A DNA stretch of 64,000 bases from Botryllus schlosseri (taxonomy: Eukaryota): contig CM119385.1 of assembly GCA_051294905.1 (NCBI GenBank), positions 2,790,001 through 2,854,000 on the forward strand, in the 5' to 3' direction. Shown here in pieces: positions 103-64,000 of the stretch; the first letter of the stretch is position 1; every line of letters starts with the position of its first letter. The notes beneath the pieces were generated by a model. That model worked only from the letters and a program-made list of their open reading frames with translations. It did not search any database and had not been told where the DNA came from. The position numbers were made by a program, and so were the translations under genes.

Positions 103-3100
103 ATGAGGCTGCTGGAGATCATGAACGAGTGATTACAGTGGATCACAGATCTGAGATAGCTGAAACTGTGAGAACTGTATTTTGGAGTAATATCGGGGAC
201 AGTATATTCAACTTCTATATTACGACGAGGCATTTGCGTCGTATGATCTCTCGACAATTCAAGATAAAGGAGTAATACGACTAATCTTGACAAACGATGA
301 AAGTAAGTAATTATTACCACAAATAAATTGGTAGGCTACTATACTAGGATTACACTCTTAACGCATATTCGAAGGGTTGTTTCGGGGTTCCGAACGACAC
401 TGATTACAAATATAACCTTGGTGTTTTCAAATTGTCTCTGGTTTTGGTGATATCCCATGGGGTTATTTTGACGAACGTCACATTTTCACTGTATGGTCCA
501 GATAAAAAAAAACGGCTAAGAAATTAAATCTACTTGTTATACTGAACACTGTATTGAATCAAAATGCAGTAAAATAATTATATTTAGGGTAATTGGATTT
601 ACTGTAATTTTCCATGTATACTGCGCAAAATTTTCACGGTTTTTTGCCCTAAAATCGGGGGGTGCGTCGTGCGTATTATACATGGAAACAACACGCTGGA
701 AAAAAATCCCTCTCGATAAAAAACTTGAAATCACACCTATCTTCATTCTTCATGTTTGTTTCCAATCGTGCATCACTTTCAGCCATCGCGCGTAGTAATT
801 AGTGGGAAGCGTGTATCCAATTAACGAGAGCCGTGTGCAAAAGCACGCGATCTCCTGCTGAGTTGGTTTGCCGTTTGTACGCGAGCAAAATTAGGTCACT
901 AATAGACACTCGTGCGTGGCAATTCTCGCCAATTATTCGCGTCAACGACCGGCCCCAACAATCGCATACGCAATTTATACATACACAAGAGGCCATGTGC
1001 GCAAGATATAATCGCTTGCGTAATCAGTCGCATCTCCAACAGACCTGTTGCGCATGACATAACCGTTAGCCTAGGCGCAATCGCATCTGTAATAGGCATC
1101 GTGCGCAAGATGTCGGTTCTTTGGCCTAAACTAACTCGCCGCCGGCGTCGCAGGCTTTGGCTACTATCGTTTAGAGACAATACCGGTAATTGTATGATTA
1201 GCAATCGCATCTGTAAAATGTCTTCTCGTGCTCAAGATGCCGTGTCGCTAGCCTGAACTATCGCGCCGCCCGCCTCGCAGGCTTTGGCTGCTATCTACTA
1301 TCGTTTAAAGACAATCCCGCTAATTGTATAATGATTAGCGATCGCTGTGTAATGATTGTTCAAGAGTGACATCGTATACGAAATCGGAACTATTCATGTA
1401 CTGAAATGCAGGGTGCGTACTATACATGGGTACAGGCTTTTTCCCAGAATTTACATGCTATTTTAGGGGTGCGTATTATACATGGGGGCGTACTATACTT
1501 GGAAAATTACGGTATCATAATTGGAGTATTTTATAGATTATTTCTCGAGAGACCACATCATATTTAGAGTGGTGCCCCTTTAATTTCAACCTTGCAATCG
1601 ATTTCTTACAAGCACGTTGCTATTTTTGCGCTGAAGAGATATTTCCATGGCTAAGCCAAGTATTATCGTGACTCTTCTATACTTGTGCAGAGAAAGCTGT
1701 TTGCAAAGTCAACACATCTACCCTTCCGAAGACGAACTTAGCGTCGACGAGCATCAAAAGGAAATAAGTCAGAGTGGAAATAGAGGGTGCCAGATGAAGA
1801 GATGCTGCAAGATGGAATGAGAGGAACTTTTAAATCAGGCCGTGACAGTGTCGTAAATGGAACATCAGCAAGAATACTGATGGAGAATGAAGATCAGTTT
1901 TGACCCATGCTCCCTTGGTAGGTACAATCTAACGCAGTGGTTTCAAACACAACATTGCCATGATCGAGTCAACCTGCGACTTTGCAACAAACTCACAAAG
2001 AGTTCGTTTTACAGAATGCTATGATAGTACAAAACAAACTACATATATATATTCCTGAAATAATTTACGATAGTTGTGACATATCCTCGACCACAAGCCT
2101 GACCTGTGCTTAAATTGAGACTACTGATAGTACTAAAGGCTCCTGCAGACAAACTTAATTGATTAGCTATGATGTAAATCTGTCACAATGTTCAGATTTT
2201 AGAAGAAGTGAAAATGTGTTGCCTGAATCAAGCCTGCTTGGATGTTGACTTGACCTCAAAGATTTTGGAAAAGACTTGGAGCTGTGCACTCAGTCTCCTG
2301 CAACCGCAAGAAATTCCGATAGAAATTCAAAAAGTTATGGGTAAGTAAGATACTTTCGCAAATTTAGTTAGTTGGCGGTCAATATCTGTCGAGTAGTTCT
2401 AGTCGCGGACTGTGAAAGATGATTAGTTCAAATTTTAGTTGCGGGTTTCTTGAAGTGAGTAATTCTTGTTCCAGCTTCGCAGTTGTGTAGGTGCTTAATA
2501 ACTGAAAAACAAATGTCATCGCGAGGGTGGGTTGAAATCGAATAGCCTACCTGAGTGATTCCACAGATCTAGTTATTTCAGGGATGGGCAATTATTTTTC
2601 TCTGCAGGCCACTTCAGTAATAGAAAGTAAGTTGGCGTGCCGAGCCGAGCCAACATGTTCAGCTATATTCTCCAGTGTATTGATTTTATTTATAAATGGA
2701 AAGCAGTGAATTACATTTTTAATAAATACGTCTCCGTGGATGTGTTGATATTAGATAGCCTAATGAGAAAAGTACGGTTAATTAACGAAATGAAAATTTA
2801 TATTTATTTTCCCTCCTAATTCAAGATAATGTTAAACATGATACATTTTGAATTCTCTGTAATCCGGGTTTTTATATCAATACATAAAAAGGTAGGCTAT
2901 ATCTTAACAGTGCGACTTGAAGAAATTGACATATATATATCGGTTTCGGCCGACATGTGGCGGTACTTTTGGTCAAGATTTCCTCGTCGTTGAGCTTTTT
3001 TGCAGCACCCTTCGCAGAGTCACATGTTAGCCGAAACGTCATTGTTAACGTCTTGGTGTGTCCTGACGCGGCGGCCGACGCCGAAATGCTGATCTCTACA

Positions 3101-3416
3101 AATTAGCTGTTCTTGCGGGTAGAGTGGTACCCATATTATTATCAAAACATCTAGTCACTATATATCGCGCGAAGAAAATTTGAATTAAGTTTCATAAATT
3201 ATAGGATTTATGTCCATTTACGAAGTAATTTTTGGTGCTTCGAGCTCGGGCCCTCTCCATTTGAGGGGTCTGGGATGCGGCAGTTGCGGCCCTGTGTTTA
3301 GTGCTCCATACCATCTTTGCATTTCAGCTTTCGACATTCTTTTTATGATGTCCATTCACCCTTTATGTATGATGAGGTCTCAGTCAAAACGCGCACTTAC
3401 AATGGCAACAAAGAAG
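103..3416 (+). pseudogene. Family A copy 1: spliced 'SAMD3-like' CMC-transposon accessory gene, decayed
   Basis: Exons 103-302 (ATG at 103 after ttttacag acceptor; ERVITVDHRSEIAETVRTVF...YYDEAFASY..IRLIL, phase-1 gtaagt donor), 1691-1917 (EDELSVDEHQKEI..EWK*RVPDEEMLQDGMRGTF...PW), 2196-2340 (ILEEVKM..VDLTSKI, phase 0 to 1), probable 3328-3416. Each aligns with exons of copies 2 and 3; stops and frameshifts present. Confidence 0.7.
602..1512. mobile_element. Tc1/mariner (Tc2/pogo-like) MITE
   Basis: TIR C(T/C)GTAATTTTCCA(T/A)GTATA at both ends, flanked by TA at 600-601 and 1513-1514; sits in an intron of family A copy 1. Confidence 0.8.
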
Positions 3417-3994
3417 GTTTGAACCAAACTATACGGAAGGAGTAACTTATTGTGACTTATTGTTACGACTTTGCTACATTGACTTGATTTTAAATCTGGA
3501 TTACGCATACAAGCTTGAGAGGGACGTACGCTATGTAATCGCGATATATTATTGAGCAGGTTTCAAAGTAAATCAATTTCCATTCCAGCTCAGTTTATGC
3601 AGCTTATGGTTTTATTCAGCAATATTCAAAAGTAGGTTTTATGTTTTTAATTCCAAAAAATGGCCACACGTGCTTCTCAAAATAGCGGGGCTCACTTTGC
3701 CCATGGCTGAGTTCGATGTATTATAGTTCGTTAGTTGCGGATTTTCAATAAGTGTCCTCCTTTCCCGAATCCCAAATATGATAACCCTACCTTGTAAGTA
3801 ATAGTGGGCGATGCCAGAGTTGATTTGAATGCAAAGTATTGGAATTTCGGCACACATTCATACAGCGATGACATAACACGTCGATTTAGTGGAAAAGTGA
3901 TATTGTTTCGAGTGAATATTGTTCAATCGGGTTGTTCAGATTTGGACATTTTTTTGGAAACTTGTTTTGCAAAGCTCAAAATGATAGTTTAGTA

Positions 3995-4292: not shown

Positions 4293-4867
4293 GTTTAGTA
4301 CATAAAAACACTTTTACAAGCGATTTGGGTCATCTTCATCGCGATCTTCTTTGCCCGCAAAGCCCCTCAGGTCAATTCTCCTTACTACTGACGATTCACC
4401 ATGGTGTTTACGTCATATCTTTATCTGTAGTGATGACCGTGTCACTGGTTTGGAGCTTTTGTGAAGTTATCAGTTGTAGACGGCTATGTAGGGATGGGAA
4501 ATATATCTGTTTTCATAACTGTACTGAAATACAGTCCTATAAATGCCAGATGTATCTTCGTTTTACCATGTACAACCAATGATTACCGGTGAACCCAGCC
4601 CTCGGTGAACCCAGCCTTACAAACTCAGCCCTCGGTGAACTCGGCCCTCGGGAACTTTTGTAATTGAGTGTATTAACAAGTATTATCATGAATTATTTAA
4701 CTAATAATGTTATTATCAACTGATTTGTCGATCTTGTAAGGAGGTCAGGGCATGCGTGGATCACGCAGTCACGGCGTGATCAGATCACTTATTGCGCAAG
4801 CACCAAGCGCGGCCTTACAAACTCGGCCCTCGGTGAATTCCGCCCTCACGAAATTTTGTATTCACCG

Positions 4868-5255
4868 GCAACCCTAATATCCCACCTCCGGCAACCCTAA
4901 TATCCCACCTCCACCAACCCTAATATCCCACCTCCGCCAACCCTAATATCCCACCTCCACCAACCCTATTATCCCCCTCCCCCAACCCTAATATCCCACC
5001 TCCGGCAACCCTAATATCCCACCTCCACCAACTCTAATATCTCACCTCCGGCAACCCTAATATCCCACCTCCCGCAACCCTAATATCCCCCCTCCAACAA
5101 CCCTAATATCCCACCTGGTAACCCTAATATCCCACCTCCACCAACCCTAATATTCCCCTCCCCAACCCTAATATCCCACCTCCGGCAATCCTAATATCCC
5201 ACCTCCGGCAACCCTAATATCCCACCTCCACCAACCCTAATATCCTACCTCCACC
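4868..5255 (+). repeat. 23-bp minisatellite (GCAACCCTAATATCCCACCTCCG), ~17 copies
   Basis: Directly visible tandem array; each unit contains one CCCTAA. Confidence 0.95.
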
Positions 5256-5335
5256 AAACCAAAAATATCCCAGCTCCCAGCTTTAATTCAAAATTGTTCG
5301 GAGGGCGGAATTCAGCGAGGTTCATAGTATTCGAG

Positions 5336-5364
5336 AAACACCATGAATACCACAAAACAAACAA
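5336..5364 (+). mobile_element. 3-prime tail fragment of the tRNA-derived SINE
   Basis: AAACACCATGAATACCACAAAACAAACAA matches the SINE ends at 27820-27850 and 36585-36616. Confidence 0.55.
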
Positions 5365-5924
5365 GTAGAGTATGTGAGCGTCGCGTTATCTCCCCCGCTT
5401 AGTCAATCCGTGAATACAAAATTTCCCGAGGGCCGAGTTTGTAAGGCTGGGTTCAGCGAGGGCTGGCCCAGCAAACACAAGATATGTTATAGATATACAT
5501 ATTATATCTCTCACGTGTTCAAAATATATCCTAATAATATGTATTATATATATAAATCTGTCGACACATTAAGATATGTATATGATATCCATATAAGATG
5601 TCTAAAAGATATCCTGAGAAGATATCTATTGTATATATTCTAAAAATATATCAATTCCCCATCCTCATCAATCGTCTTCCACAAAACTTGATTCTAGCTG
5701 GCCCTGAACTGTCGTCGGTTACATCCTGCACTTCACATGAAAGTAAACCAACCATTAATTTTACAAATCATGCATTACTTTTACTTTTGTATTAAACAAT
5801 AAGCAAAAAATTGAACCAAGCAATCAATACATTGGACGCACGTAGCATCACTATACAATTGGATTATATATTCATATTGAAATAAACCCGTATATTTGCA
5901 GCCGACACTAGTCAGAAGATATTT

Positions 5925-6265
5925 ACTTGCGAAGTGCTTTTTTGCTTAGTTCAAGTGTTGATTTTGAGACGAGTGATGTGTTGGAATGGACCCGAGTACT
6001 TCCAGGTGACATTCGTCAGCAACTAGTAGAGAGTAGAACTTGTTGATCCTATCACCAAATATGAAGTCATCGGCATGAAATTTTGAATAATCAAGGTGAT
6101 CCACGCCAGTGACGTCATGTTTGGTGATACTTTCAACAGGTTCTTTTCAATTTTCTACTACTTGCTGACGAATGTTGCCGGGAGGCATTCGGGTTTATTT
6201 GGGTAGCAATGCATTATTCGTTTGGGAGTCAGCGCTTGCACAGAGTAAAAAAACACTTAGCAAGT
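5925..6265. repeat. Imperfect ~340-bp palindrome (foldback-type element)
   Basis: ACATTCGTCAGCAA.TAGTAG...TATCACCAAA.ATGA.GTCA at 6010-6075 matches the reverse complement of 6105-6175; weaker pairing continues out to 5925/6265. Confidence 0.75.
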
Positions 6266-21487: not shown

Positions 21488-21701
21488 TGTGGTGATTGTT
21501 CGAGACACTTGGTTGATTACTGATTACTGTAATTAGTTTACTTCGCTCTGTTCATTCTCTTTGTACCTCAGTTGCTTATGTCTGCACGCTTGAAAGTGCA
21601 TGTCTTAGTTCCGTTTAGATTGTAGCCGAATATCAGTTAATTAAAACCTAGAAAGCTCTATCAAGCAAATTCGTCTACATTTTCCTCGAAAGGTCACCAC
21701 A
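21488..21701 (+). repeat. 5-prime LTR
   Basis: TG...CA; about 15 mismatches in 214 bp versus the 3-prime LTR (manual count). Confidence 0.95.
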
Positions 21702-21714: not shown

Positions 21715-21737
21715 CTATTGATACAATCGACTCTGGA

Positions 21738-41300: not shown

Positions 41301-41379
41301 ATTTTCTGATTATACTTGAAGTTTTAACTTCCCAAGGACATCGCTACTTCCACTTGCATTTGAGTAGAAATTAATGGCA

Positions 41380-44512: not shown

Positions 44513-45399
44513 TTTGAGCGATTTTCTAAACATATAGTATAAACTATGTCTATCCAGTGTATACCGAAGTGGATCGGATATCTGGTGATCTACAGGATAT
44601 TGATATTATATTTGGAAACGCGCAATCCATAACGAATTGATCTCGGTTACATTGATCAAAATATTACCAAACTACATGACCGTAATTAAGTTTTTTTTAT
44701 ATTGTGAAAAAAAGATAAACACGAAACTATATACACCAACGTTACTTAAACTATAAAATGCAAAGCCCTAATCAGAGCTTACTAGATATCTCGTCACCCA
44801 AGCCTCCCATATTAAAATGGGTAGCCATAATAAATTTGCTCAATGCAGTAACAAGCAATCACGCGAACTTGGAGAAAATGCCTAATTGTATGAATCTATC
44901 CAATGCCTAATTGTATGAATCTAGAGACACAATGCTCTATTTCAGGAGTCTCAAATACGCGGCCGCGTCGGCATTTTCGAAATTTTAATAATCGGTAATA
45001 TTCAACTGTCTGGTATCTTGTTTAGATCTGAGAAAATGAAATTGGACGTGAGCACATTTGCGTTCGAGATGCCAGCTCTAGTTAATGTTGATTTCCGAAA
45101 CATATTCGGGCCACTTCGACCCTACTTCTCCAAATCAGGGCTCTGGTGTGGCAGATAAGACCCAGCCCTCTGCCTTACACCCTAATTTGATTTTGCTATC
45201 GCATGTTCAAGCTTTCCAGAGATCAAATCAACTATGACATCAATCCAACTTTGGTAATACAATGGTTGTCACATTTTATTGATCAAGCTATATTGGCGTG
45301 ACAATTTTTAACATGTTTCGCTTCTTGGCTATTTATACTGCCCAATTACAATGGATGTGACAAAATAATGCACTGGATATTGCGTGATACGCGACGTAA

Positions 45400-45697
45400 A
45401 TGATTCGCTGGTGGACTGGATATGCTTGGTAGGCAGGGGATTTATGTTGTAAATGAGGCTGATGATGGATCAATATTTTGTCGTGTAGAATATATTCTAT
45501 ATTTCAATGAACAGTGGCACATGTGTGGTGAATTGCTGAAGTCGAGATTTGTACGACATTTACACTGCTATGCTTTGGAGGAAACCGGTTCTGTTTACGT
45601 TTTTCAGCCCGGGGAAATATTTTACCAAAGGCCCCATGATGCATACTTTATAGGCTGCATCAACAAATATGTAAGTTTGAAGCCTAAAGATAATTGA
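45400..45697 (+). pseudogene. C-terminal fragment of an animal CACTA/EnSpm (CMC) transposase
   Basis: IFCRVEYIL..QW......F.RHLHCY.LEE...VY.FQP.E......DAY.....KYVSLK resembles the C-terminus of animal EnSpm-type transposases; lies 130 bp upstream of family A copy 2. Confidence 0.6.
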
Positions 45698-47620
45698 GCT
45701 CATACAGTGTAGTATGTTGATTGAAAAATACTGCTTGGCACAAGTTTTGTGCAATTTTCATTATTTTACAGATACACACTACAGCTGGTTAGTAAATTAC
45801 CACTGTGATTGTTGTACAGTTGAATATGAAACTGCTGATTAGTTATGGTGATATTAGAAGAGTGGTCAGAGTTAATCACCAATCTGCGGTTCCTGATGTT
45901 GTGAGAAATGTATTTCGTAATGAAATTGGGGACAATCAATTCAAAATGGAATATTATGACAAGACATTTGATTCGTACGTCGAACTTTACAACATGTCGG
46001 CAATTGTAGATGGACTAACGTTGCGGCTGATTTTGAGCACCAGTGGCGGTAAGTGAAATGTAGGATCAGTAGGCTCATTCACAAGAGAGATGAATATTTA
46101 CCTACTCATATTTTTCTTGCAATAAATTAGATTAGAATTAGATTACTGGCATGTCGCTATAATTTTGTGAAATTACACAACTAAATTATCTACCGTAGTT
46201 TTCCAAGTCTGATCTGATGTGCCTTGGCGAAATCGATTCACCCCTCACCGAGTCTATTTTTATTGGTGCAGAGGGAACCTCTCCAAAAACTAACAACTCT
46301 GTTGTTGAACGTTTGTTTCCTGTATAACGGGTGAGAGGAGGAATATTGAGGATATTGATATTGAGCACAAGAGAATAGCATATTTTGAAACAACTACATT
46401 AATAATAACTGAAATCAATTGAAACATTTCAAAAACTCTACTTGGCATTTCTCCAAAATCTCAAATCAGATAGCATGCAGCATAGTATGACCTCCGGGCG
46501 TGTGTTGGCCTGTATGGAATCGGTGTCCTGTGCTCACACTGTTTTATTTTTCAATATTTTTTTATTAAATTACTTGAACTTGGAAACTCGTCGCTGCTCA
46601 CCTGATATATCAGGCAAAAAGGCCAGCGATTCCCATCAGGTGTGTTGGTGACATCGTCTATAACGCACAGCGTCACGCGAATTTTTCAACGAAGGGGTTC
46701 CCAAACTTTTTATAGTCCTGATCTCAAACTTTTATTGAAGATTATTGAAGATTATTAAAGAAAGTGGTCTGCAACTTCGCCCAAACCTACTCATGGCTTA
46801 TGCGAGAGTCTATTGACTATTCGCGCAGTAATAGCAATTACGCAATTATAAACTCGTCAAAATTTGACCATGAAAAATACCTCTGACCATCTCTGATTAG
46901 AAAATATATTTTTTCTTGTAGATTCCAACCTTATACCCTCCGGAGGATGAGCGTAGCATCGAAGCGCATCAAAATGAAATGAAGACTGAGTGGAAAAGAA
47001 GCCGAAACGCTGATAAAAACACAATCTTGGATAGGATGAAAAGGACCTTTAAAGATCGTCGACATAACGTTAGCAAAGGGACATCGACAAAGAGTCTGTT
47101 GTGTGCGTACCCAGTTCTGGCAGGTGCATATTGGGTAGGTATAACGTATTGGTTTCAGGCACGATTTATAAGCCCTGTGTGCATACATACGAAACGCACA
47201 AGAATGAATTACACTAAACGCTATGATATATATTTTATATATTTTTCGTAAGTGTATAATATTCTCTATGTATTGGTAGAGCATTATACATAGTTATGAC
47301 CAGTACGTCACCGGACTTGCACGTCAATTTAAACTACTAATGAAATTGAAGGCCCCCGCAGCAAAGTTATACTATACTAACCACCCATGGCATGGTATGC
47401 CATGAAGTAAATATTTCCCACTGTTCAGATTTTGGAAGAAATGAAAATGATTTGTCAGAAACAAGACTGTTCCGACGATACTTACTCTGTCGACCTGACG
47501 TCAAAAATTTTTGGGAAGAGTTATAGCTCAGCATCAAGATTCATACTAGCGCTGGATAGTCCTCACGAAGTTGAAGCGTAAGTAATGTTTTTATCCTTTC
47601 ACGGGTTGGCCAACACACGA

Positions 47621-47858
47621 GCAATGAGCATGCGACACAATGAAAAACCACAGATCAGTATGCCACACTTTGGCATGTGGTTTCACAACTCAAAAACTCA
47701 CCCTAACCCCTAACATAATCCTGAAATTAACTCTTGTATATATCTTAACCCCAAACCTATTCCAAACTAGACCCTCATTCTAAACCTTACGCAGTCGTAA
47801 ACCCAAATTTCACCCACATTCTCAAGTGTCGCATGCCCAATTGTCGTACGCTCATTGC
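47621..47858. mobile_element. MITE with telomere-like core, copy 2
   Basis: GCAATGAGCATGCGACACAAT terminus and inverted counterpart; internal CCCTAACCCCTAAC; homologous to 7917-8163. Confidence 0.7.
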
Positions 47859-48372
47859 GTAGGGCTGAGCATAATCGAGTGCGTGATGGATTCAATTCTA
47901 ACCCACTTATCAGGCTTCCAGTCGAATATTCGAGTATCACAATGGTATTTTCCAGCCGTACATATTTAATTGCACTTTGTGGCGATGCTGTGGGTTGATC
48001 ATGACTTCAGAAATATGATATTTCTAGTATTGTGGCTTTTACGACCAATCGTGATTTCACGGTTTCCGCAGTGGAAAATACTATCTGAACTATACGTCTC
48101 TTTGATAAATTTACTAGCAGTTAAAAGGAGCGTATAATTACAATACTCGAAACAATCGTTTTTCACTACTCGACTCGAATCACTACAATTTATGCTGGAT
48201 TCGTATTCGAGTACTCGAATTATTGTGCCCTACGCATGTGTCAACGTACCCCTTTTACTTGATAAACCGCCGAAGTTCGAACTTTCGCTGACTACGTTAT
48301 TTGTTATTTCCGGAGTTATGACACTTCGTTTTCAGGTACTCAAATACTGGACTGGATGGTCTACATCCCAAC

Positions 48373-48832
48373 CATCTTCAAAGAAAAGTATGACAACTTC
48401 CTGATTGTGGACAAGGTATGTTGATCATTGGTATTTCTCAAACTGCAGCTAAACATTTCCACCCATTCCTTACATATTTTGGACATTTAAAATGGCCTCT
48501 GTCAGTATTGTTTTCACAGTTCGTACTTTATTTAATTTGAGACGATATGATATGACCACATGATGTATCTTGTAGAATATTTATATATGCTCGTGTGGAT
48601 CTCATCTTCAAAGAAAAGTATGACAACTTCCTGATTGTGGACAAGGTATGTTGATCATTGGTATTTCTCAAACTGCAGCTAAACATTTCCACCCATTCAT
48701 TACATATTTTGGACATTTAAAATGGCCTCTGTCAGTATTGTTTTCACAGTTCGTACTTTATTTAATTTGAGACGATATGATATGACCACATGATGTATCT
48801 TGTAGAATATTTATATATGCTCGTGTGGATCT
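48373..48832 (+). repeat. 230-bp near-perfect tandem duplication
   Basis: 48373-48602 versus 48603-48832; about one mismatch seen. Confidence 0.95.
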
Positions 48833-48836
48833 ACGC

Positions 48837-49926: not shown

Positions 49927-50225
49927 ATCTACGCCTATCGTTTTCCAACTTATTTTCACTGAACATCCCCGCATCAAGCTTAATATTTCCCAATGCCTTC
50001 TAAAAAGCAAAGTCATGAGTAATCTGGTAAATTAACTTTTCCAGAGTACCTAAGTAGCAGTCAACTACTTGTATTCCTTACTGATGCGTTTTTCGTGTTC
50101 AACAGTTTTAACTGATGAATACTGTGTGCTCTGGCATAATTAAGTGAAAATGAAATGGAATGTACTTTGACGATGCATTGCTATGCATAGTCCATAAAGA
50201 GCTTCTTGGAGGTACAGAACTTCAA

Positions 50226-50363
50226 TATACAATTAAATAGTATATTCATATTGAAATGAACCCGAATATTTTCGGCTGACACTCGTGACCCTGACACCCC
50301 TGACGAGTGTCAGCCGAAAATATTCGGGTTCATTTCAATATGAATATACTATTTAATTGTATA
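50226..50363. repeat. Perfect 61-bp inverted repeat with 16-nt loop
   Basis: 50226-50286 is the exact reverse complement of 50303-50363; a related half-arm lies at ~5855-5912. Confidence 0.92.
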
Positions 50364-52309
50364 GTCCATAAAGAAGTTCAATGGGTCATGCATTGCGCGT
50401 TTTTCAATCAGAATTCATGGGTTATCATTAATTAAATATAATTTACATAATGTTGAAGCTTCTGCCTACCCGCCCACATTATAAATCACTGATCCACAAA
50501 CCTCACACTCTTTTAAACTATTCCGTAGGACCGAAGAATGTCCATCCGACCATCGCATTCAATTCTCTGATGGAAAAGTGGACGATTCATTTCGATGGAG
50601 AAGCTGTGAGAGGATTATTTGGTTTTCACCATGCTCTAGCATGACTGATGGCTATTTATTGGGTTTTAAACGTGAAGTTTGCTCGTTAATCATCAAACTC
50701 CTTGAACTTTGTCGCAAATTTTCCCGCCAAGCTTCCAGACGTCAAACCAACTAATGCTGTTCGCACCAAGTTAAACATGATACCCGATGATTAATTGTCG
50801 TATTATGATTTGTGGAGGTCCTGTTTGTGCCCTCTTTGATGACTGCCAGCAGTAATAACTTGTGTTGCGACGCTCAGCATTGGTTTTTCAATTGATCGGT
50901 GCTGCTCTAGTCGTCCTTGGCGATATCAATTCTCAATATATTTGTAATGGTCGTGGCCCAGAGTTTTTGGTCTTTTGATTATATTTTTGGATTGCTCGTA
51001 TTGGCAACCAACTGGCCTAAACCTTATAAGCACCATTGTTCAATTGTTGGCACCAGCACAGCGTGCTCATTACACAATAAAATTTTCAACTTGAACAACA
51101 AACATATATTGTTTGTTTACCTGTAATAATTATGCATCATTATGAATTTGTGACACTGCAAGTTTCCAATATTGTTGATTGTACTTGTATGGAACATTGC
51201 TTTATTTGCTGCTAATATACACTGCTTTTTAATCTGCAGACTGACTACTGATTTTGTGTGTTTAAGGTGAAAGGTCAATGACAATTATTTGTCAGGCTCG
51301 GTTTCTTGCAATCCTGGTCAGTCAGCACAGTTGGGATTTGGCTGAGATGAAAGTTCAATGAAAATTATCAATCAGACTCGGTTTTTTCCAATCCGAGTCA
51401 GGGAGAACTTGGGATTTACCTACTTTTAATGAGGTCGGAAAGTAGTTTCCCGGGTCACAACTCGGGGAATTTTGAACCTAACCTAATGTCGGGATTTACC
51501 GAGGATATTTTTTACAGTGTAGTTTCAAAAAATAGATATCCGCAGTTATCCGAGGTTGTTACTTCAAACTCGCCAAGATGTACCTTCTCGACTTGCAAAA
51601 AAGGACTATTAACAAGAGGTGAATGTTGGTTGCCATATAATTGAGGATGCCGTGATGGTTAAAAAAAGGGGTCCGCGCCGACAAAAAATTGAAAGCCACT
51701 CTACTAAATGTTACTGCTCACATTAGCTGATGACTCAAAATGGTCATCACTTCCACCTGGCCAAGTCCGCATATACATCGGCCTATTTGCTATTTAATGT
51801 CATATGTTGACTGAAAATAAGATCCGCAATGCCCTGTTGCCGGTATATATCATAAGCTGATTACTGAAAGAACATCAATGTGTGTGTGTGTATAGAGTAT
51901 GTTCGACCTGATACTTCTTTCACATAATAATTCATTTCTTTAAGACACCCAACTCCGCGTGTCCTACAATTTGCTTCGATACAATGAAGAGAGACTGGAC
52001 CGTCTGGTTTGATGTTGAAAAGGTGAAGAATATCGAGAGCTTCAATGACGCATTTGCAGTCATGCTAATATTCATTGGATCTTCGAAATGCAGTTTCTGA
52101 TTGTCAAGTCATTTTTCTGGCGCGTTTGCCAGGTGTAAAAGACATCGGTACTGCAGCTTACGCCAAACTGGATCACATTCATGACTAATTTGCAAAAATA
52201 CAGTAATTGGAATGAAGGTGATTTAGTGTTTTGTGAATGCTTAAAGTATGGTTATATGCTGTACCTATAGGGCGTTCCTCGAGGATATCGGGGTAGGATG
52301 AAGTGGAAT

Positions 52310-52440
52310 CCGGATAGGGCAAGGTGGAAAGTTGCCCACCTCATGATGAGGTGGAAAAACAACCACCAGTTAGAATTAGGTAGAAAATTTCCCTCCTCTT
52401 TGAAGGTGATTTTTGAAACACCTTAAATGTGGGCACAGTG
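52310..52440 (+). mobile_element. Right terminus of a CACTG-type CMC element (carrying family A copy 2)
   Basis: Four AGGTG...CC(A/T)CC subterminal repeats, then ...ACAGTG followed by TA; downstream of the last exon of copy 2. Confidence 0.55.
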
Positions 52441-53314
52441 TATGTGTCGTATGTTCTTCGTCCTCAAATTAATTTCAGTAATATTCTTTTGTAATCTAAC
52501 ACGGACAATATACGGATGTGAACCAGATCATATATGATCTTATCGTCGATTATATGCTACAATTCAGTATTGTTTTCTGAAGGAAAGTATCTTCTCATTC
52601 AGATTATTGGAGGCGATGAGGAAAACACTCGGAGAACAAGATGTGCGATTTGAACCTAAACCAGAAGTAACAGTTCCGGGTCATAATGATTTTCCGGCCA
52701 ATATGCGGTTTAACGTGTATGAAGTTTTACGCCCGGTCAGAGGATCCGTCGCCATCTGGAGATCCATCTAAAAGAAATACTCCGAAGAATGGACGCCACG
52801 GAACAAACTTACGAATAATGCATCCGTCGAGCAAGGCAGCCCAAATCAAACAAATGGTATTGTAGAAATAGGTTCCCACTCATCGAACGAATAAGCGTAT
52901 TGGTCATCTACATTACTGAATTCTGCATTAATTCTGCATTTTTTTCCTGTTTAACTAATATCGTAGGAAAAGTAACATCAATATGACTTCATAAAAATAA
53001 AATTATTCAATATGGTAACAGGGAAGGAAAGAGAAATTACACGGCAAGGCTCGCATATTGCATTGGCGAAGACGGGATTTTGAACGTGGAACTTGGTGGA
53101 TCAACGGTGTGGAAGGATGCTCTGAACAGTGCACCTAAGCCACCAAAAAATGACGTGGCGATAATACCTCGCATTTAAAATGGGTAATTTGCAGGATCTT
53201 GAAAACAAGGATATATACGGAATTATAGAAGATATATTTCCGTATTACCAAGGACCAAACAACGGACAATACAAACGGACAATACATGGTATATATTTCT
53301 ATATATACCATGTG
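52441..53314 (+). pseudogene. Family B copy
   Basis: LLEAMRKT..VRFE..MRFNVYEV..LKEILRRMDATE..RNRFPLIERIS and KVTSI*LHKNKIIQYGNREGKRNYTARLAYCIGEDGIL.. match 38342-39329 (-). Confidence 0.75.
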
Positions 53315-56925: not shown

Positions 56926-58397
56926 TGGGGTTCAATGGACATTCCAAGATACTTGGAGGAAGCTTCGCTAACGATGTTGAAAACATCATGATCACAAGAA
57001 CGACAAGTAGATATGGTAATGTTGACTATCTCGGCTATTAGCGCAATGGTAATGTTGACTATCTCGGCTATTAGCGCAAAAAGACGATCGGTGTCGAATT
57101 GCCCTGTACTATTCAAAGGATTTGCGCAGTTTGGCGTTTTCTTAACTGGTGTGTATTGCTGTTGATTGCTGTGTACGTGTCGGAGGTCACCATCGTTAAG
57201 AGCAGGATATGCCGCTTGGTATTTGGATCGCCATTTCCTACTCGTGCGCCGTGTATTCCGTGGTACTGAACCGACGGTCAGGCTTGGCATCGTATCATTC
57301 CCCAAAAGAACAACTTTCTCTGCGAACATTTCTTTTGCTTTTTCGAATGGCACATTGGTCTTTTCTTTTATTGCTAAGATTTTGGCTTCAGCCTTATCTA
57401 CGGGACATCCGCCATACGCTGTGACACTGAAGACAGTTAACACATTTTTTGTCGTTTTGGCATTGCTCATACTCGTGGTCTCGACTACCGCAATTTGTGC
57501 TGCATTTTTTTCCCACGACAGTTGTCGTTGGTGTGCCCGTAATGATTGCACTTGTAACAACGTAATGGCGGTGGTTTGTATGGCCTCCTCCGGAAAGATG
57601 AGTAACCAATCGATACAGAGCGGGGGTACTGTTCTGACTGGAAGTGGAGCAATAGAGACATTGTCTCCACCCTCTTACGTTCACTAGTCATTCTCTTACG
57701 TTCACTAGTCATTCTAGTGAGTCTTTTCACGGAGCTGACCCCGAATTCCGAGAGATCTTTGTTCAATTCATCATCAGTGAACTCTAGTGGAACACCAGAA
57801 ATAACGGCGCGAATGCCGTCAGATCGAGCGGGGTATGGTGACGCCCTGATTTCTATATTTGTTTTACCGTCAGTTATCAAGTTGCTGGTAACCAATTTGG
57901 TAACCTGCTTGCTGTTATTACAGGTTATTAATAAATCACCCGAAGGGAAAACCCGAATGGCTTTGTAGGGACCAATTGTTTTATGAAGCCAAGAATTTAT
58001 CACATTGGGACGATAGTGTTTGAGTTTCCTACCCTCGCCATTTGCGGATAGTACTACCTGTAACGAGGCAACTTTACGAGATTCATTATTGCTGCTAGAA
58101 CTCGGTGAGCTAGCGGTACTGCCTGAGTATGCGAGGTCACGAATAGATGGTGCGCTATATACAGGAACGGAAGGGATAACTTGGGATGTGGCACATATCA
58201 TCGGTTCAGTATTTGCGTCTATAGTATCCGCAACGTCATTCAATGGCACGGTATTGCTAATTTCTCCTGCCTACGGCAAATGATTTCGCCGCTACTTCTG
58301 CACGACCTGGTGAGTCATCACTATCATCGCCATCTGCTGAATTGAACGCTTCTGACGACACGCGCTTACCCGCAGAAGGCGACTTAATTGTGTCCAT
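56922..58397 (-). pseudogene. LINE ORF1 (gag-like nucleic-acid binding protein)
   Basis: PSGDLLI, RAVISGVP, RCYKCNHYGHTNDNC, NCGSRDH, CVNC knuckles; stops and frameshifts. Confidence 0.88.
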
Positions 58398-58592: not shown

Positions 58593-58755
58593 CACTGTAA
58601 ATCTAAAAGGTGGAGATTTCCTCCATTAAAAGTGGTTCACGCTTTTGACCATTTATGGTGGAATGAAAATCCACCCCCATCATGGTGGAAATACCTTCCT
58701 CCCTATAAGGGGGAATACCTTCCTCCCTATATGGGGGAATACCCTCCACCCCAAC
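58593..58755. mobile_element. CACTG terminus of a CMC element (carrying family A copy 3); partner end outside window
   Basis: TA|CACTGTAAA followed by five GGTGGA/GGGGAATACC..CC subterminal repeats; lies downstream of the last exon of copy 3. Confidence 0.65.
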
Positions 58756-59120: not shown

Positions 59121-59921
59121 CATAACTATGATGACAGTTCCATTGTTTATGGCAACATATTGGTAGTCCTCACAACGGAATTTGTCAGCTCTATGCCAGG
59201 CAGCTTTTGCAGGTATATGACGAAATGAAGGTGAGAGTGTGCTTGATAATCTTCTGAAACTTGATGTTAAATATCCAATGAGCTGCGATCAGAAGAGCAA
59301 GTGCTTCATCAAAACTTTCAATGCTTTTTGAGAAGACGAGTCCATCCAAGTGCAGGCTATATTGAGAATTGTAGACCATCGTTGGATATGGAGAGATAGA
59401 AACCTGGAAGATATATAACTATGAAATCTTCGGACTTAAGATCATTATGATATCGAGATAGGTTTAGTACATGGGACAATTTATATTACCAATGCGCAAG
59501 TTATAAACATGACTTTGTGTCACGAAGTGTTGCTCATTTGATTTATACTTTTAAAAATAATCTTGTCAAGTCAGTCTGCTTTGGTCGCGATGAAGTATAT
59601 ATTTCAGTCGCGATGAAGTATGTATTTCAATCTCATGAGCTCCAATCTATTACTAAAGCTATGCGACGCCTGTACCAGGTCTATGAAACTATTTAATTGA
59701 GCAATTTTGACACTTTCTATTGGTAGAAATTGTTGGGGCATATCAGAAATATGGATTGACTCGTGACTCGGTTATGAAACACCGGTCTACCACTATGGTC
59801 ATTTACACCGGGCCGGTATTATTTATTTTTCATTCTGTATTTGCCGACTTGTAGCACGGGTCACTTCTCGGAATTTTGTAAGACACCGCTTACGCGGATG
59901 AGATGGCGAGGTAGAAACCAG

Positions 59922-60364
59922 ACTAGAACTACAATTACTGAATTTTCAAAATCAGCAACTACAACAGTGGTTATCAACCTTTTTGTCTTCTCGGACCCCT
60001 TTTGGACCGTCAAGGACCACGCGGGAGCGTGCAAAAAAAAGACTTTTCTTGAAAATATTTGTATCAGTAGGCTCTTGGCAATTTAGCAATTAAAATGAGT
60101 CTCACAGCTGGATATTTCATATCAGACGGCCATTCTGCTGATGTGAGTTTGGAGTTTTTAATGAAGCGAGACGGCCTCGTGATTTTCCTAATTCAAAAAA
60201 ACAAACACAAATTACGTTATCAACTATGGTATAAATTTAGAGGCTTCGCGGACCCCCTGAAAATGCTTCGTGGACCTCCGGTTGAGAACCACTGAACTAG
60301 AACTACAACTACTGAATTTTCAAAATCAGCAACTAGAACTACAACTATTGAATTTTCAAAATCA
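59922..60364 (+). repeat. 36-bp minisatellite (~3 copies) split by a hAT MITE
   Basis: AACTAGAACTACAACTACTGAATTTTCAAAATCAGC units on both sides of 59965-60294. Confidence 0.8.
59965..60294. mobile_element. hAT (Buster/Charlie-type) MITE
   Basis: CAGTGGTTATCAACC / GGTTGAGAACCACTG; TSD AACTACAA / AACTAGAA (7/8). Confidence 0.85.
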
Positions 60365-60592
60365 AATAAAAATAAACCTTAGTTAGTTTACGATCAACTA
60401 ACTAACTGTTTAGTTTTAACAATGTGTATTATACATAATACATCATCTATCTACGAACAGCTTACCTCTCCAATATGAAGAAAATTGTCATATCTTTCTC
60501 CAAACATGGATGGTGTACCAGCACGCCAATCCACCACTCCATCACCTATAAAGCAGACGCAGGTTATTAGAACCATCGATGATTACTTCTAG

Positions 60593-61138
60593 CAGGGTTG
60601 TAACCAAGTCACAAGTCAATTTCACTTTCATTATTTTGACTCGAGTCAAGTCGAGTCATTTTAAATTCACCACCGAGTCCAAGTCATCGAGCAGAGGGTC
60701 AAGTCCGAGTCATGATATCATGACTCGAGTCCGAGTCCAAGTCATTATGTTGACTGCTCAGTTTCCAGTTAAAGTCTTGTTAAACTCACTTCATATAACT
60801 ATGTTTGGTGATATCGAATGTTTAGCATTTATAATATACTAATTTTTCTCCCTTTTAGCAGTTTCTGGTCGCATTTTCAAGTACCAGTATCAATCAGACG
60901 AAATCCCAGTAGGATGGTTACTTCTCAATTCTACGAAATTACAATGAAATGTCGGTCTTGGCCGTCTGAGTCTCGAGTCAATGACTTGGTCCGAGTCATG
61001 TGCAATGACTCGAGTACAAGTCGAGTCAATACACAGATTGACTCGAGTCGAGTCATCTCCGTATTTTGAAAAAAATGACTCGAGTTATCCGAAAATTTTG
61101 ACTCGAGTCGAGTCATGACTCGAGTCATTACAACCCTG
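60593..61138. mobile_element. hAT MITE with GACTCGAG subterminal repeats
   Basis: TIR CAGGGTTGTAA; perfect TSD ACTTCTAG; related fragments at ~27390-27510 and ~62240-62520. Confidence 0.9.
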
Positions 61139-64000
61139 ACTTCTAGTGTTCCGATATTTATTTTGAATGCGTGTAATTTTTGGAAATGAATCCAACTGTA
61201 ACCGGCTGGTACGAGACAATGTTATTGTGAAAGCCACGATTATTGGTGAGGCGCAAGTCAAACAAGTTTCTACAATTGCCTCGCAACGGCGGAAGTTAGA
61301 GAGCCACTGCACTTGAATTCATTCGAAAAAAGTTGTTAGCGGAAAATTTGCAATGCCACACAATTTCATGAAATAATATTCTCACCAAGTAATCCTTGAA
61401 TAGTCTTGGGAACTTTAGGCCACTTTATCTTGCCCTGAGCTACATTGTAGCGGCTGTGTTGTGTGCTTCAAAATATCAAACCCAATCAAGGTTTCAGCCT
61501 CTTTCAACATCTTAATATGTTACATAAAATATGATACACCTGTGTAATGACAATTCATCCTATAGATTACTGTACTTACCCATTGAGCATCCCATAGTGC
61601 TGGATAGCTCAGGAGTATCTCCGATAACTGAGCCCCTTCTAAAATCTGATTTCTGCGGTGTTGGTGGGTCCTCTTCATTCAATCTAGGAGCGTGACTTTG
61701 TTTGGTTCCCTCTTTTTCACTTCTTGTTGTATATCTTTTATGTGATTATCAATGCTGTGTTGATCTTCGACAAGATCCGGACAGAAATTATCCTGAAAAA
61801 TTAGAATTCAACTAGCTCATCTCAAAACCAAGATAAAAATTAATTGGACTTACAGCCCTGGCTCTTTTGCATCTTGAGCTGCTAGTTTCTTCTTCTTCCT
61901 CAATAACATTCTTTCGTTTTGTACCATACTTCTGCTTCATCTGATTCACCAATTCAGCTTGTAACGGTTTCCGATAGTCCTTGAACTTCTGCTTCAAGGC
62001 AATATGCCACGAGCCCTGAAGAAATTGCAATTATTGTTACACTCAACTCTGCAGAGGGTACCAATACTAAAAGCAAGAAAAAAACCCTAAACAGCCCGCA
62101 AAGTCTGAAAATCGGCATTGTTTCAACACTGGCAGCGCCACAACACAATGAACATAACAATGGTCAATTTCGTTGAGCGATTATTGGGAACAATGCCGAT
62201 TTTCAGACTTTGAGGGCTGTTTTGAGGTGGTTCCATTGCATGGACTCAAGTCGCGATTTTTGGGTGACTCGACTTGACTCAATTCTTTTTTTTTTTACAA
62301 ATACGTTAAATGAATCGACTCGAATCAATTTTTCATTGCAACTTCGAAGAATAGTTATTTCGAGTATGAGTCCTGATACTTGGCAAAATAGAGCCAGAAA
62401 CTGTTAAGACTGAGGAAAATTACTGTATTCTGGATGGGAGCCAATCACTTTAGCAGAATTGACAAAACGTGGATTGAACTGAAAACCTAACATTGAACAT
62501 AACGACTTGGACTCGGCTTATCTTGTAGTTATTCTGGAATTGTGATTATTGCCTTCAGAACTACATTGAAGCTGCGTGCAGTGTACAGGTATAGTCATGA
62601 CAAAAGAGACCATAGGCGCCGACTTACGAGGTTACGAGGTGGCGCAGGTTCGGACATTTTGATTTGCAAAAACTGTCGCCGAGGCTGCGTAATACCAGCG
62701 CGTATTTAATTGTTCACCAGACATCAGTTACTCGCTAATTGACAGCGCTTCCGGACTCTTTGGCAAGCTTATCATACGCCAAAAATCGTCAACAAGAATA
62801 GATTATATCAGGCCTGGGCAATGTGCAGAAATTTGTGTGGGCGTCAACACGTAATTCAATTAGTATGTGTTAGCGGCCGTCGATATTGGTGCGTATAATA
62901 CGCTGATATGAAAACATACAGTAGTCCGGAATTCACCTGTAATGGGCAAGGACAGTTTACTATGGATATTTGCCCAGGACTACAGAAACATGCAGCTGAC
63001 TTACATAGCTGGAATTTTCTTCGTTATTGTCTTTCAAAACTGGATAGTTTCTTAATAATGCCGAGCATACTTCTTGATACTGATGCGCAGTCGGGTACCT
63101 GTTAGATAGATCGGCATATAGTTAGCTGATATCTATCCAAACTAACGAAATGCATGCACGAGTTTCAAAACAATATACCATGGATGAATTGAATAGAATT
63201 ATACTTACAAAGTATATTGCAAAAGATCTTGAAAGAGAATTGTCCTGATCTCTTTTCTCAGTCTTGATGGAATTACGATATTGCCAGCGCTCCGAGGTAC
63301 TAAGTGTTTGATGCGTTGCACCAGGTATTGAGGAAAAGTTGGGATGTTGTAGATCACAGGCCATCGTTGGTGTGAACGTGAAAGTGATGATTCAACTGAA
63401 TCATCCATCAGATCACGTTCAGATGAATCCACAGTTAGGGAGTCGCTAGTGATGCTGCTGTCGCAAACGCTTTGTACTTTTTCTAGGAAAATTGGGTATA
63501 GAGGTGAAAAAATTGATAAATGAAGTCAATCCTAAACTCACCCGTAACACTTGAAGTTTGTACACATATAGTGGCAGCGCCGAACATGAGCCAATAGAGA
63601 CTTCCTGTCCAAGTACTGGTTCATGCATGCAAGGATAGGACATTTCAACACATTCATAGTAATTTCTCTACTGATGTCCTGTTAAGTCATACATTTTACA
63701 TTTTAACATTCAATTTATACCTAAAACGCACTGGTATCAATTATTATGCTGAATGACAGTCTAACACTATATTGATTAACCACAGATACTGTAATACTAA
63801 ACGTCGGACTGAGCGGGACTGAAGACAAGTTATGCATCGTCCGTGACCGTGATCCGTCGTTTAGTATTGGCAGAATTATACTGAATGTATTCATAGTAAA
63901 TTCTCACATTTACAAAATTGTGACGCCAGAAATATATCAGAAGATTTCCTTTCATTTAAACGAGATCTCTCCTTGCAGCAGTCGCAATGAAAATCCAAAT

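What the first reader, a model, noticed from the sequence alone, without database searches (positions are those of the whole stretch)
103..63482. Three diverged copies of one spliced CMC-transposon accessory gene with conserved exon architecture
Seen: copies at 103-3416 (+), 45826-52188 (+) and 59191-63482 (-) align exon by exon. One exon is 213 bp in both copies 2 and 3 and ends in W|GT (same W-ending junction in copy 1, whose donor is damaged); another is 80 bp in both copies 2 and 3 (DW...P..F.E.YDNFL). Copies 1 and 2 share a 5-prime acceptor (ttttacag|ATA) and a phase-1 first exon. Copy 2 starts 130 bp after a CMC-type transposase stop, and copies 2 and 3 end near CACTG termini. Known: animal EnSpm/CMC elements carry a second, often 'SAMD3-like'-annotated ORF of unknown function. 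Inference: an old, intron-rich two-gene transposon lineage whose second gene was conserved at protein level across diverged families; function unknown.
Basis: partly seen in the sequence, partly recalled or inferred. Interest (0 to 1): 0.7.

Follow-up and report, generated by a model that had tools for sequence, protein, structure and literature searches.

The report
Second gene of CMC jumping genes
The window holds three decayed copies of the spliced second gene of CACTG-ended (CMC/EnSpm-type) DNA transposons. Intact, transcribed relatives elsewhere in this animal genome, and distant relatives in other organisms, keep the same pair: a transposase followed by an uncharacterised 'SAMD3-like' protein.

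Summary
Copies at 103-2327 (+), 45826-50795 (+) and 63482-59147 (-) are homologous exon by exon. The 213-bp exon ending W|GT and the 80-bp exon are real. RNA joints on an intact relative confirm them, giving 9 coding exons and a 552-aa product.

All three window copies are broken:
- Copy 1 keeps 3 recognisable exons.
- Copy 2 lacks most of exon 2 and all of exons 3-5, and has two stops.
- Copy 3 lacks exon 1 and has a TGA.

Copy 2's element ends at its TIR at 51519. The stretch 51520-52440 is the tail of a fourth, different element.

Intact relatives are 9.9-kb elements with CACTG TIRs, 2-bp target duplications and subterminal repeats. They carry an 835-aa DDE transposase of the Transposase_21/Plavaka kind, followed by this gene.

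The transposase-then-ORF2 order recurs in about ten or more diverged families of this genome. It also recurs in 20 of 23 informative metagenome contigs whose transposase is only about 30% identical.

ORF2 homologues occur in Styela, Ciona, Hydra and fish, where they are annotated 'SAMD3-like'. Its confidently predicted core has no Pfam family and no PDB fold match.

The function remains inferred: a trans-acting transposition cofactor. I found no published description, but this may already be recorded in Repbase.

The parts
39..46 (+). Acceptor-like TTTTACAG upstream of the copy 1 ATG
   Evidence: Same motif at 45764 in copy 2 and in the intact relative L036. Its use in RNA was not tested.
103..292 (+). 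Copy 1, first coding exon (N-terminal ~70-aa domain), frameshifted
   Evidence: tblastn of the spliced elB product: 53% over 34 aa and 44% over 32 aa in two frames. ATG at 103.
1716..1882 (+). Copy 1, remnant of the 213-bp exon (E6), with a stop and a frameshift
   Evidence: 35-41% aa identity to elB E6.
2196..2327 (+). Copy 1, remnant of E7
   Evidence: 52% over 48 aa. Also 50% over 54 aa to copy 2.
45398..45694 (+). C-terminal remnant of the CMC transposase (residues 733-818 of the 835-aa ORF1). The element is broken on its 5' side at 45427.
   Evidence: tblastn 84%. The same piece ends 835-852-aa open frames in intact copies. Similarity to elB and to sibling copies starts exactly at 45427.
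45826..46048 (+). Copy 2, E1 (ATG to donor)
   Evidence: 92% nt identity to the RNA-supported E1 of the intact relative, no gaps.
46272..46310 (+). Copy 2, first 39 nt of E2, then a deletion of the rest of E2 and of E3-E5
   Evidence: blastn. The same deletion (elB 5172 to 6066) is present in sibling copies L031-L034.
46922..47134 (+). Copy 2, E6, 213 bp, ends W|GT
   Evidence: Gap-free alignment to the RNA-supported 213-bp exon.
47430..47563 (+). Copy 2, E7 (aligned part)
   Evidence: 93% nt identity.
48337..48416 (+). Copy 2, E8, 80 bp (DW..YDNFL). A 230-bp tandem duplication (48373-48602 / 48603-48832) starts inside it.
50531..50795 (+). Copy 2, last exon, with two in-frame stops
   Evidence: (1 TGA, 1 TAA).
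51489..51519 (-). Right 31-bp TIR of the copy 2 element (CACTGTAAAAAATATCCTCGGTAAATCCCGA read inward). No left TIR in the window.
51939..52440 (+). 3' end of a fourth, more diverged element: last-exon remnant 51939-52185 and CAGTG terminus 52436-52440
   Evidence: Profile hit i-E 1e-5 at 51939-52067. 37.5% to the elB last exon. Terminus seen.
58593..58614 (+). TIR at the 3' end of the copy 3 element (the element lies on the minus strand). Its partner lies at window-equivalent 64953-64974, outside the window.
   Evidence: C15:2848593 and C15:2854953.
59147..59403 (-). Copy 3, last exon (2 gap positions against the intact relative)
   Evidence: 93% nt identity. tblastn splits it into two frames.
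60466..60545 (-). Copy 3, 80-bp exon with AG|..|GT
61388..61510 (-). Copy 3, E7-equivalent exon
61580..61792 (-). Copy 3, 213-bp exon, ends W|GT, with an in-frame TGA
61845..62015 (-). Copy 3, exon with a basic, NLS-like stretch
63005..63098 (-). Copy 3, exon encoding the YPT..YP.L.D motif
   Evidence: Weak DUF7648 hit.
63214..63482 (-). Copy 3, second coding exon (27 gap positions). E1 and the ATG are deleted upstream of it.
63547..63681 (-). Remnant of the transposase N-terminal C2H2-type zinc-finger region, kept in the transposase-less family
   Evidence: 44% to elB ORF1 residues 49-93 and 84% to the elC1 piece.

Best explanation
The three stretches are decayed copies of ORF2, the intron-rich second gene of CMC (CACTA/EnSpm-Mirage-Chapaev) DNA transposons. 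Copy 2 belongs to a family whose intact 9.9-kb members carry, between 31-bp CACTG TIRs, an 835-aa zinc-finger plus DDE transposase followed about 150 bp later by ORF2 (9 coding exons, 552 aa, transcribed and spliced). Copy 3 belongs to a 7.3-kb family that lost the transposase core but keeps an open ORF2. Copy 1 is an old remnant.

Shown here: homology, gene model, splicing, TIRs, target duplications, linkage to the transposase, and wide conservation.

Inferred mechanism: ORF2 is a trans-acting cofactor of the element. It probably enters the nucleus, because a basic stretch is conserved. It probably self-associates through a swappable N-terminal module (its own ~70-aa domain here and in Styela; SAM or CIDE-N in other lineages). 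It would then work with the transposase at the TIR and subterminal TTACCGAG[A/G]AT repeats, in the way TnpA helps TnpD in maize En/Spm or the Myb-like protein helps the Harbinger transposase.

My confidence in the identity (ORF2 of a two-gene CMC lineage) is about 0.9. My confidence in the cofactor mechanism is about 0.35.
For: Exon-by-exon homology.

Element limits come from copies that are 99.9-100% identical but have unrelated flanks. These give TIRs and 2-bp duplications (TA, TT). Terminus counts are 82 and 36 against 0 for the control patterns.

Transposase: a weak Plavaka hit; homologues carry PF02992 or PF18759; D311, D406, E500 and CxxC..H are conserved.

RNA: GT..AG joints seen in three contig runs and in raw RNA-seq reads give an open 552-aa frame.

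Linkage: the same order and strand recur across families whose transposase piece is 36-100% identical. ORF1 and ORF2 identities correlate (rho 0.94 over 15 families). In other organisms, 20 of 23 contigs with at least 3 kb downstream of a transposase relative have collinear ORF2 exons on the same strand. None of the 25 contigs with under 1 kb downstream do. Only 2 hits lie elsewhere.

Constraint: dN/dS is 0.55 (p 0.016) for ORF2 and 0.32 for ORF1 between intact copies. The two families keep full-length 29% identity.

Subterminal repeats sharing the TIR's inner motif.

N-terminal modules: SAM and CIDE-N in homologues, and the local domain shared with Styela.
Against: No experiment or structural match points to any activity. 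The core has no Pfam family, no PDB sequence relative and no fold match above Z 4.9.

A sub-family lacking most of E2 and all of E3-E5 still multiplied. ORF2 is therefore not needed in cis.

The transposase has its own zinc fingers and may bind the ends unaided. One element with the copy-3 TIRs and a 784-aa transposase frame showed no ORF2 hit (it could not be fetched).

dN/dS values are only moderately below 1. Whether ORF2 shares a leader with ORF1 was not tested.
Confidence: 0.8

Rival explanations
1. ORF2 is a regulator rather than a helper. It would dampen transposition, or protect the element from host silencing, for example by titrating the transposase or recruiting host factors through its SAM, CIDE-N or local N-terminal module.
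For: It is conserved with the transposase, yet deletion derivatives multiply without an intact ORF2. A transposase-less family keeps ORF2 open. N-terminal protein-interaction modules are swapped between lineages.
Against: No domain links it to any silencing or regulatory pathway. The evidence cannot separate this reading from the helper reading.
Confidence: 0.25
2. ORF2 is a host gene of the SAMD3-like family that was captured once or several times by CMC elements and is carried as a passenger with no role in the element's life.
For: Homologues are annotated as ordinary genes in fish, Hydra, Styela and Ciona. Some carry host-type domains such as SAM and LRR.
Against: Its position, strand and exon order after the transposase are kept in families down to about 36% identity, and in 20 of 23 distant metagenome contigs. 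ORF1 and ORF2 diverge together. dN/dS is below 1. Passengers are usually fragmentary and short-lived.
Confidence: 0.07
3. The similarities between the three stretches are chance matches or low-complexity matches in repeat-rich DNA.
For: Copy 1 matches are short (24-55 aa). A family profile scores them only at i-E 0.1-0.3.
Against: The matches are collinear, on the same strand and multi-exon, with E values down to 1e-10 between copies and 1e-40 or better to intact relatives. Splice sites and exon lengths are shared.
Confidence: 0.01

Closest known systems
Maize En/Spm (CACTA) with TnpD transposase and TnpA accessory protein
   Same: Both have CACTG/CACTA TIRs, short target duplications, subterminal repeat arrays, a Transposase_21-type DDE enzyme, and a second protein encoded inside the element. 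An acceptor-like site sits before the ORF2 start codon, which would fit a shared leader.
   Different: ORF2 has no detectable similarity to plant TnpA families (no Pfam hit even at E 10). The target duplication is 2 bp rather than the 3 bp I recall for plant CACTA. The transposase is one uninterrupted ORF with N-terminal C2H2 fingers. Alternative splicing from a common transcript was not tested.
PIF/Harbinger two-gene transposons (transposase plus Myb-like DNA-binding protein; host derivatives HARBI1/NAIF1)
   Same: Both are two-gene cut-and-paste elements whose second protein is kept across wide distances and has host-gene relatives.
   Different: They belong to a different transposase superfamily. 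No Myb/SANT/MADF signal was found in ORF2.
Proteins annotated 'sterile alpha motif domain-containing protein 3-like' (for example Carassius auratus XP_026114886.1) and uncharacterised Styela, Ciona and Hydra proteins
   Same: They share the core of about 300-350 aa (blastp 8e-22 to 9e-33 against the spliced elB product) and the conserved motifs WP..Y.LP.FP, YP..Y..V..L..YP.L.D and RM.RT..RR.
   Different: The fish proteins, and one Hydra protein, start with a SAM domain. One Hydra isoform starts with CIDE-N. The transposon ORF2 here starts with a ~70-aa domain shared with Styela. Whether mammalian SAMD3 itself shares the core was not tested.
Fungal CMC/Plavaka and KDZ elements carrying TET/JBP genes (PMC12730594, title and abstract only)
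   Same: These are CMC-related transposons that carry a conserved extra gene beside the transposase.
   Different: The extra gene is unrelated and the host kingdom is different.

Membership tests
CMC (CACTA/EnSpm-Mirage-Chapaev) DNA transposons | DDE transposase related to Transposase_21 (tnp2) / Plavaka | tested here: met
   ORF1 itself matches Plavaka at E 0.004, below the Pfam cut-off. Among 36 homologues, 6 match PF02992, 5 match PF18759 and 2 match DUF4218. D311, D406 and E500 are invariant or nearly so, with CxxC and H(3)E.
CMC (CACTA/EnSpm-Mirage-Chapaev) DNA transposons | Terminal inverted repeats beginning CACTG/CACTA | tested here: met
   There are 22-bp and 31-bp TIRs beginning CACTGTAAA. 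The genome holds 82 and 36 termini, in pairs 5-14 kb apart, against 0 for the reversed control patterns.
CMC (CACTA/EnSpm-Mirage-Chapaev) DNA transposons | Target-site duplication of 2-3 bp | tested here: met
   A 2-bp duplication (TA or TT) is present in 4 of 6 complete copies read. The other two differ by one base.
CMC (CACTA/EnSpm-Mirage-Chapaev) DNA transposons | Subterminal repeats | tested here: met
   At least 7 direct copies of TACCGAGAAT lie within 300 bp of the left tip of elB, and none lie inside the element. The motif also occurs in the TIR. There are other repeats at the right end, and 5 copies of CCCTATATGG in elC1.
En/Spm TnpA-type accessory gene | Second gene inside the TIRs, kept with the transposase | tested here: met
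En/Spm TnpA-type accessory gene | Sequence relationship to plant TnpA / TNP1 families | tested here: not met
   No Pfam hit of that kind for the exons or for nine full-length homologues, even at E 10.
En/Spm TnpA-type accessory gene | Made from a transcript shared with the transposase by alternative splicing | not tested
   The single read-laying run covered only ORF2 (L036:400-6000). The acceptor-like TTTTACAG before the ATG is conserved.
En/Spm TnpA-type accessory gene | Binds the subterminal repeats and brings the ends together | not testable with these tools
   This needs binding assays.
SAMD3-like proteins | Shared non-SAM core domain | tested here: met
   A last-exon profile finds Carassius SAMD3-like P0115 at E 7.9e-5. 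blastp of the spliced product against P0115 gives 8e-22 over residues 171-533.
SAMD3-like proteins | N-terminal SAM domain | tested here: not met
   E1 has no SAM hit. SAM is present in P0115 and P0124 only.

The most novel reading that the evidence does not exclude
ORF2 would define an ancient, metazoan-wide accessory protein of CMC transposons with a fold not represented among solved structures. The host genes annotated SAMD3-like, and possibly vertebrate SAMD3 itself, would be domesticated copies of it. Its interchangeable N-terminal modules (the local domain, SAM, CIDE-N) would mark it as a self-assembling scaffold for the transposition complex.
Probability: 0.3. Interest if true: 0.7.

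Novelty: new member of a known kind. Interest (0 to 1): 0.5.

Why it matters
Two-gene cut-and-paste transposons are well studied in plants (En/Spm) and for Harbinger, but the second gene of animal CMC elements has no assigned function. Four things make the question testable here:
- intact, recently moved and transcribed elements in one genome;
- an RNA-supported gene model;
- a confident domain model without any known fold;
- linkage kept at about 30% transposase identity.

The work also suggests that a widespread set of 'SAMD3-like' gene annotations in fish, tunicates and cnidarians are transposon genes or derive from them. That matters for genome annotation and for the origin of SAMD3.

Tried and rejected
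Pfam on the window exons and on full-length homologues gave nothing for the core. The only signals were a weak DUF7648 hit, SAM, CIDE-N and LRR in some homologues.

PDB by sequence, using a profile of nine homologues, returned only SAM-level noise.

Foldseek against PDB and BFVD, and VIA-align against 48,161 chains, were run on two models. The second model has pLDDT of about 95 over residues 110-348. There was no match with E at or below 0.001, and none above Z 4.9.

The ESM Atlas returned only unnamed chordate clusters.

The search for homologous proteins with Styela P0070, and with the nine-protein alignment, returned only P0070 itself.

The idea that the N-terminal domain is CIDE-N was dropped. 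hhalign against the Hydra CIDE-N isoform gave 0.2% probability.

The idea of a Myb/MADF-like DNA-binding region was recalled from the motif pattern. It was dropped because no profile hit supports it.

The inverted 880-bp pair at 38365-39227 / 52444-53252 was considered as long TIRs of copy 2. It was rejected: it is 71% identical coding sequence of another repeat, and it lies outside the CAGTG termini.

RNA loose ends were searched for an upstream leader exon. They come from paralogous copies.

Paper searches found no description of this gene pair.

As a result, the DNA left of window position 1, the DNA right of 64000, and further families could not be read.

Full report
SETTING AND LIMITS. 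The window is C15:2790001-2854000 of a 495-Mb animal assembly. It is 38-50% G+C, has no N runs, and is dense in repeats.

The joined (spliced) ORF2 protein has no reference, so it was never sent to a search or folding tool. Database searches were made exon by exon, by reference. Full-length database homologues (P0070, P0135) stood in for folding. Exons were joined only inside local scripts that read the held files. That was done to check the reading frame, compute dN/dS, run local BLAST and build a local profile.

THE OBSERVATION. A six-frame self-comparison of the window gives same-order, same-strand matches between the three stretches:
- 114-209 with 45847-45942 (47%)
- 2178-2315 with 47411-47572 (50%, E 5e-10)
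- 47036-47137 with 61577-61678 on the minus strand (41%)
- 48329-48418 with 60463-60552 on the minus strand (43%)

The coordinates are in the parts list. 63482 is the first base of copy 3's second coding exon.

INTACT RELATIVES DEFINE THE ELEMENTS. Copy 3's exon has at least 25 relatives in the genome. Three of them were aligned with their flanks and give a 7,320-bp unit. The C1 and C4 copies are 99.9% identical and the C8 copy is 95%, with unrelated flanks. The unit is bounded by CACTGTAAATCTAAAAGGTGGA in inverted orientation. Window copy 3 is an 84-92% identical copy on the minus strand, running from 58593 to beyond 64000. Its other TIR lies at window-equivalent 64953-64974.

The piece 45404-45694 ends open frames of 835-852 aa in other copies. 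Two such copies, on C1 and C3, are 99.96-100% identical over 9.9 kb with unrelated flanks. A third, on C7, is about 95% identical. They are bounded by a 31-bp TIR beginning CACTGTAAAAAATATCC, with TA or TT duplicated at the insertion site.

Genome-wide there are 82 termini of the first kind and 36 of the second, mostly in pairs 5-14 kb apart. The reversed control patterns give none. Near-identical copies with different flanks point to recent transposition.

ORF1. The 835-aa frame has two C2H2-like fingers near its N-terminus and a weak Plavaka hit (E 0.004). It has 61 homologues in Ciona, a fish, a sponge and many unnamed assemblies. Of 36 homologues aligned, 6 match Transposase_21, 5 match Plavaka and 2 match DUF4218. 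D311, D406, E500, CxxC and H(3)E are invariant or nearly so. Together with the CACTG TIRs, the 2-bp duplications and the subterminal repeats, this places the elements in the CMC superfamily.

ORF2 GENE MODEL. Contigs of three runs, and raw reads of an RNA-seq run of the same organism label, were laid on the ORF2 region of the C1 copy (L036:400-6000). They show GT..AG joints at 776/1473, 1676/1733, 1958/2037, 2381/3017, 3229/4192, 4348/4572 and 4651/5602. Raw-read support ranges from 3 to 32 reads for five of them.

With one further intron (2139/2196) taken from a contig that matches the copy exactly, these give nine coding exons of 223, 204, 226, 103, 186, 213, 157, 80 and 267 nt, and an open 552-aa frame. 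The 213-bp exon ends in W followed by GT. The 80-bp exon encodes DW..P..F.E.YDNFL.

A homology-guided model of the 7.3-kb family gives an open frame of about 481 aa that aligns end to end with the 552-aa product at 29% identity. It has exons of exactly 213 and 80 nt at the same places. That model has no RNA support of its own.

STATE OF THE WINDOW COPIES.
- Copy 2 is cut on its 5' side at 45427, where a retroelement pol fragment (41364-44462 and its tail) abuts it. It keeps only the last 86-97 residues of the transposase. It lacks most of E2 and all of E3-E5. It has a 230-bp tandem duplication at E8 and two stops in the last exon. Its intact right TIR ends at 51519.
- The deletion of most of E2 and all of E3-E5, and a second deletion that removes the transposase core (elB 1746-3746), are shared with sibling copies L031-L034. 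This sub-family has paired TIRs in at least eight places. It is therefore a non-autonomous derivative that multiplied without an intact ORF2.
- Copy 3 lacks E1 and the ATG (elC1 1433-1965 is deleted). It has a TGA in the 213-bp exon and indels elsewhere.
- Copy 1 keeps E1, E6 and E7 only, at 35-53% identity to the 9.9-kb family, with frameshifts and a stop.
It has a last-exon remnant at 51939-52185 and a CAGTG terminus at 52436-52440.

LINKAGE.
- Within this genome, the three own-genome searches place a transposase C-terminus, a first ORF2 exon 0.1-0.6 kb further on, and a last ORF2 exon 3-8 kb further on. All lie on one strand, at dozens of sites. These fall into about ten identity classes, from 100% down to about 36%.
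- The identities of the ORF1 piece and of the last ORF2 exon fall together (Spearman 0.94 over 15 families). The families are related, so this is descriptive and not a test.
- Outside this genome, a scan of metagenome contigs with the transposase alignment gave 80 loci at 26-36% identity. I ran a local profile of eight of the nine aligned database homologues plus the two local models against their six-frame pieces.
- ORF2 exons were found downstream, on the same strand and in collinear order, in 12 of 13 loci with more than 5 kb downstream, 8 of 10 with 3-5 kb, 4 of 10 with 2-3 kb, 2 of 22 with 1-2 kb and 0 of 25 with less. Only two hits lay elsewhere. The organisms behind these contigs are unknown to me.
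- A fish gene prediction, Leuciscus P0116, fuses a transposase fragment (35% to ORF1 residues 225-460) with the ORF2 C-terminus.

SELECTION. Between the two intact 9.9-kb copies that differ by about 5%, ORF2 has dN/dS 0.55 (26 synonymous and 55 non-synonymous changes, Fisher p 0.016). ORF1 has 0.32 (p 6e-8). In the transposase-less family, the C1 and C8 copies both keep ORF2 open, with dN/dS 0.47 (p 0.07). Decay after insertion pushes such values towards 1, so they are upper bounds.

THE PROTEIN.
- Search. A profile of the last exon searched against 1.84 billion representatives found 107 proteins. Most are single-exon fragments. A few are full-length: Styela clava XP_039259664.1 (same architecture), Hydra vulgaris, Ciona intestinalis, and Carassius and Phoxinus proteins named 'SAMD3-like'.
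- Conserved features. The alignment shows the motifs listed under Closest known systems and a basic stretch before the 213-bp exon.
- N-terminal modules. The N-terminal module varies. Here and in Styela it is a ~70-aa domain (hhalign 95.8%). It is SAM in fish and one Hydra protein, and CIDE-N in a Hydra isoform.
- Predicted fold. AlphaFold2 models give a confident core: P0070 residues 260-481 at pLDDT 73-96, and P0135 residues 110-348 at about 95 with pTM 0.73. The core has about nine helices, a four-stranded sheet and three more helices.
- No known relative. No Pfam family, PDB sequence or PDB/BFVD fold matches it. A missing match does not prove a new fold.

HOW IT MOST LIKELY WORKS. What is shown is that ORF2 is an integral, expressed, long-conserved gene of these elements, and that it is dispensable in cis. 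I infer that it acts in trans on the transposition complex.

The elements have TIRs whose inner motif recurs in a subterminal array. In En/Spm this is the arrangement to which the accessory protein binds. SAM and CIDE-N are known self-association modules (established knowledge, not tested here). Their exchange at one position suggests that self-assembly matters. The conserved basic stretch suggests nuclear import.

I put the cofactor reading at about 0.35, a regulatory or anti-silencing role at about 0.25, and a passenger gene at about 0.07. The remaining probability is not assigned to any specific function.

COMPARISON AND NOVELTY. The elements meet the tested defining features of CMC transposons. 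ORF2 works like a TnpA-type second gene in its position and conservation. It is not a sequence relative of plant TnpA, so I do not file it there. It shares its core with 'SAMD3-like' proteins but lacks their SAM domain.

I found no paper describing this gene pair. I therefore rate it a new member of a known kind. The domestication and new-fold reading is given as the novel case.

Noticed in passing
window 21492-27139: An LTR retroelement with 212-bp LTRs (21492-21703 and 26928-27139, 94% identical) and a reverse-transcriptase ORF at 24267-25325 (RVT_1, E 1e-25).
   Followed up: partly
window 41364-44462: A retroelement pol fragment with a weak integrase hit. It contains a 292-bp tandem duplication (43553-43845 / 43841-44137) and abuts the 5' break of CMC copy 2.
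   Followed up: partly
window 54900-58300 (minus strand): A LINE-like element. The piece 56282-56677 matches the endonuclease-reverse transcriptase domain (E 8.5e-12).
   Followed up: no
window 38365-39227 and 52444-53252; also 28380-28830: Two inverted copies, 71% identical over 882 bp, of a coding repeat. The piece 38315-38662 (-) resembles the start of a forkhead domain (E 2.4e-4, below the Pfam cut-off). The right copy begins 3 bp after a CAGTG terminus. There is a third partial copy.
   Followed up: partly
G000:C15:2978521-2985725 against window 43900-51519: A 99.4% identical duplicate of the pol fragment plus CMC copy 2 lies 144.6 kb further along the same chromosome. It is either a segmental duplication or an assembly duplicate.
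   Followed up: partly
G000:C3:8323462-8331183: A 7.7-kb unit with the TIRs of the copy 3 family and a 784-aa transposase-like open frame. It showed no ORF2 hit in my searches. It may be the autonomous partner of that family, but it could not be fetched.
   Followed up: no
L107 4404-5225; L120 3800-4654: In two metagenome or WGS contigs, most of ORF2 (profile positions about 32-308) lies in one open piece. These are intron-poor relatives of the intron-rich gene.
   Followed up: no
elC1 positions 5500-5950 (L014 3507-3957); window 59922-60364: A 36-bp tandem array sits in the intron before the last exon of the 7.3-kb family. It is shortened in the window copy.
   Followed up: no
window 4865-5290 and 12099-13460: A tandem array with a period of about 23 bp, and a complex block of direct and inverted repeats. 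Both are unrelated to the finding.
   Followed up: no
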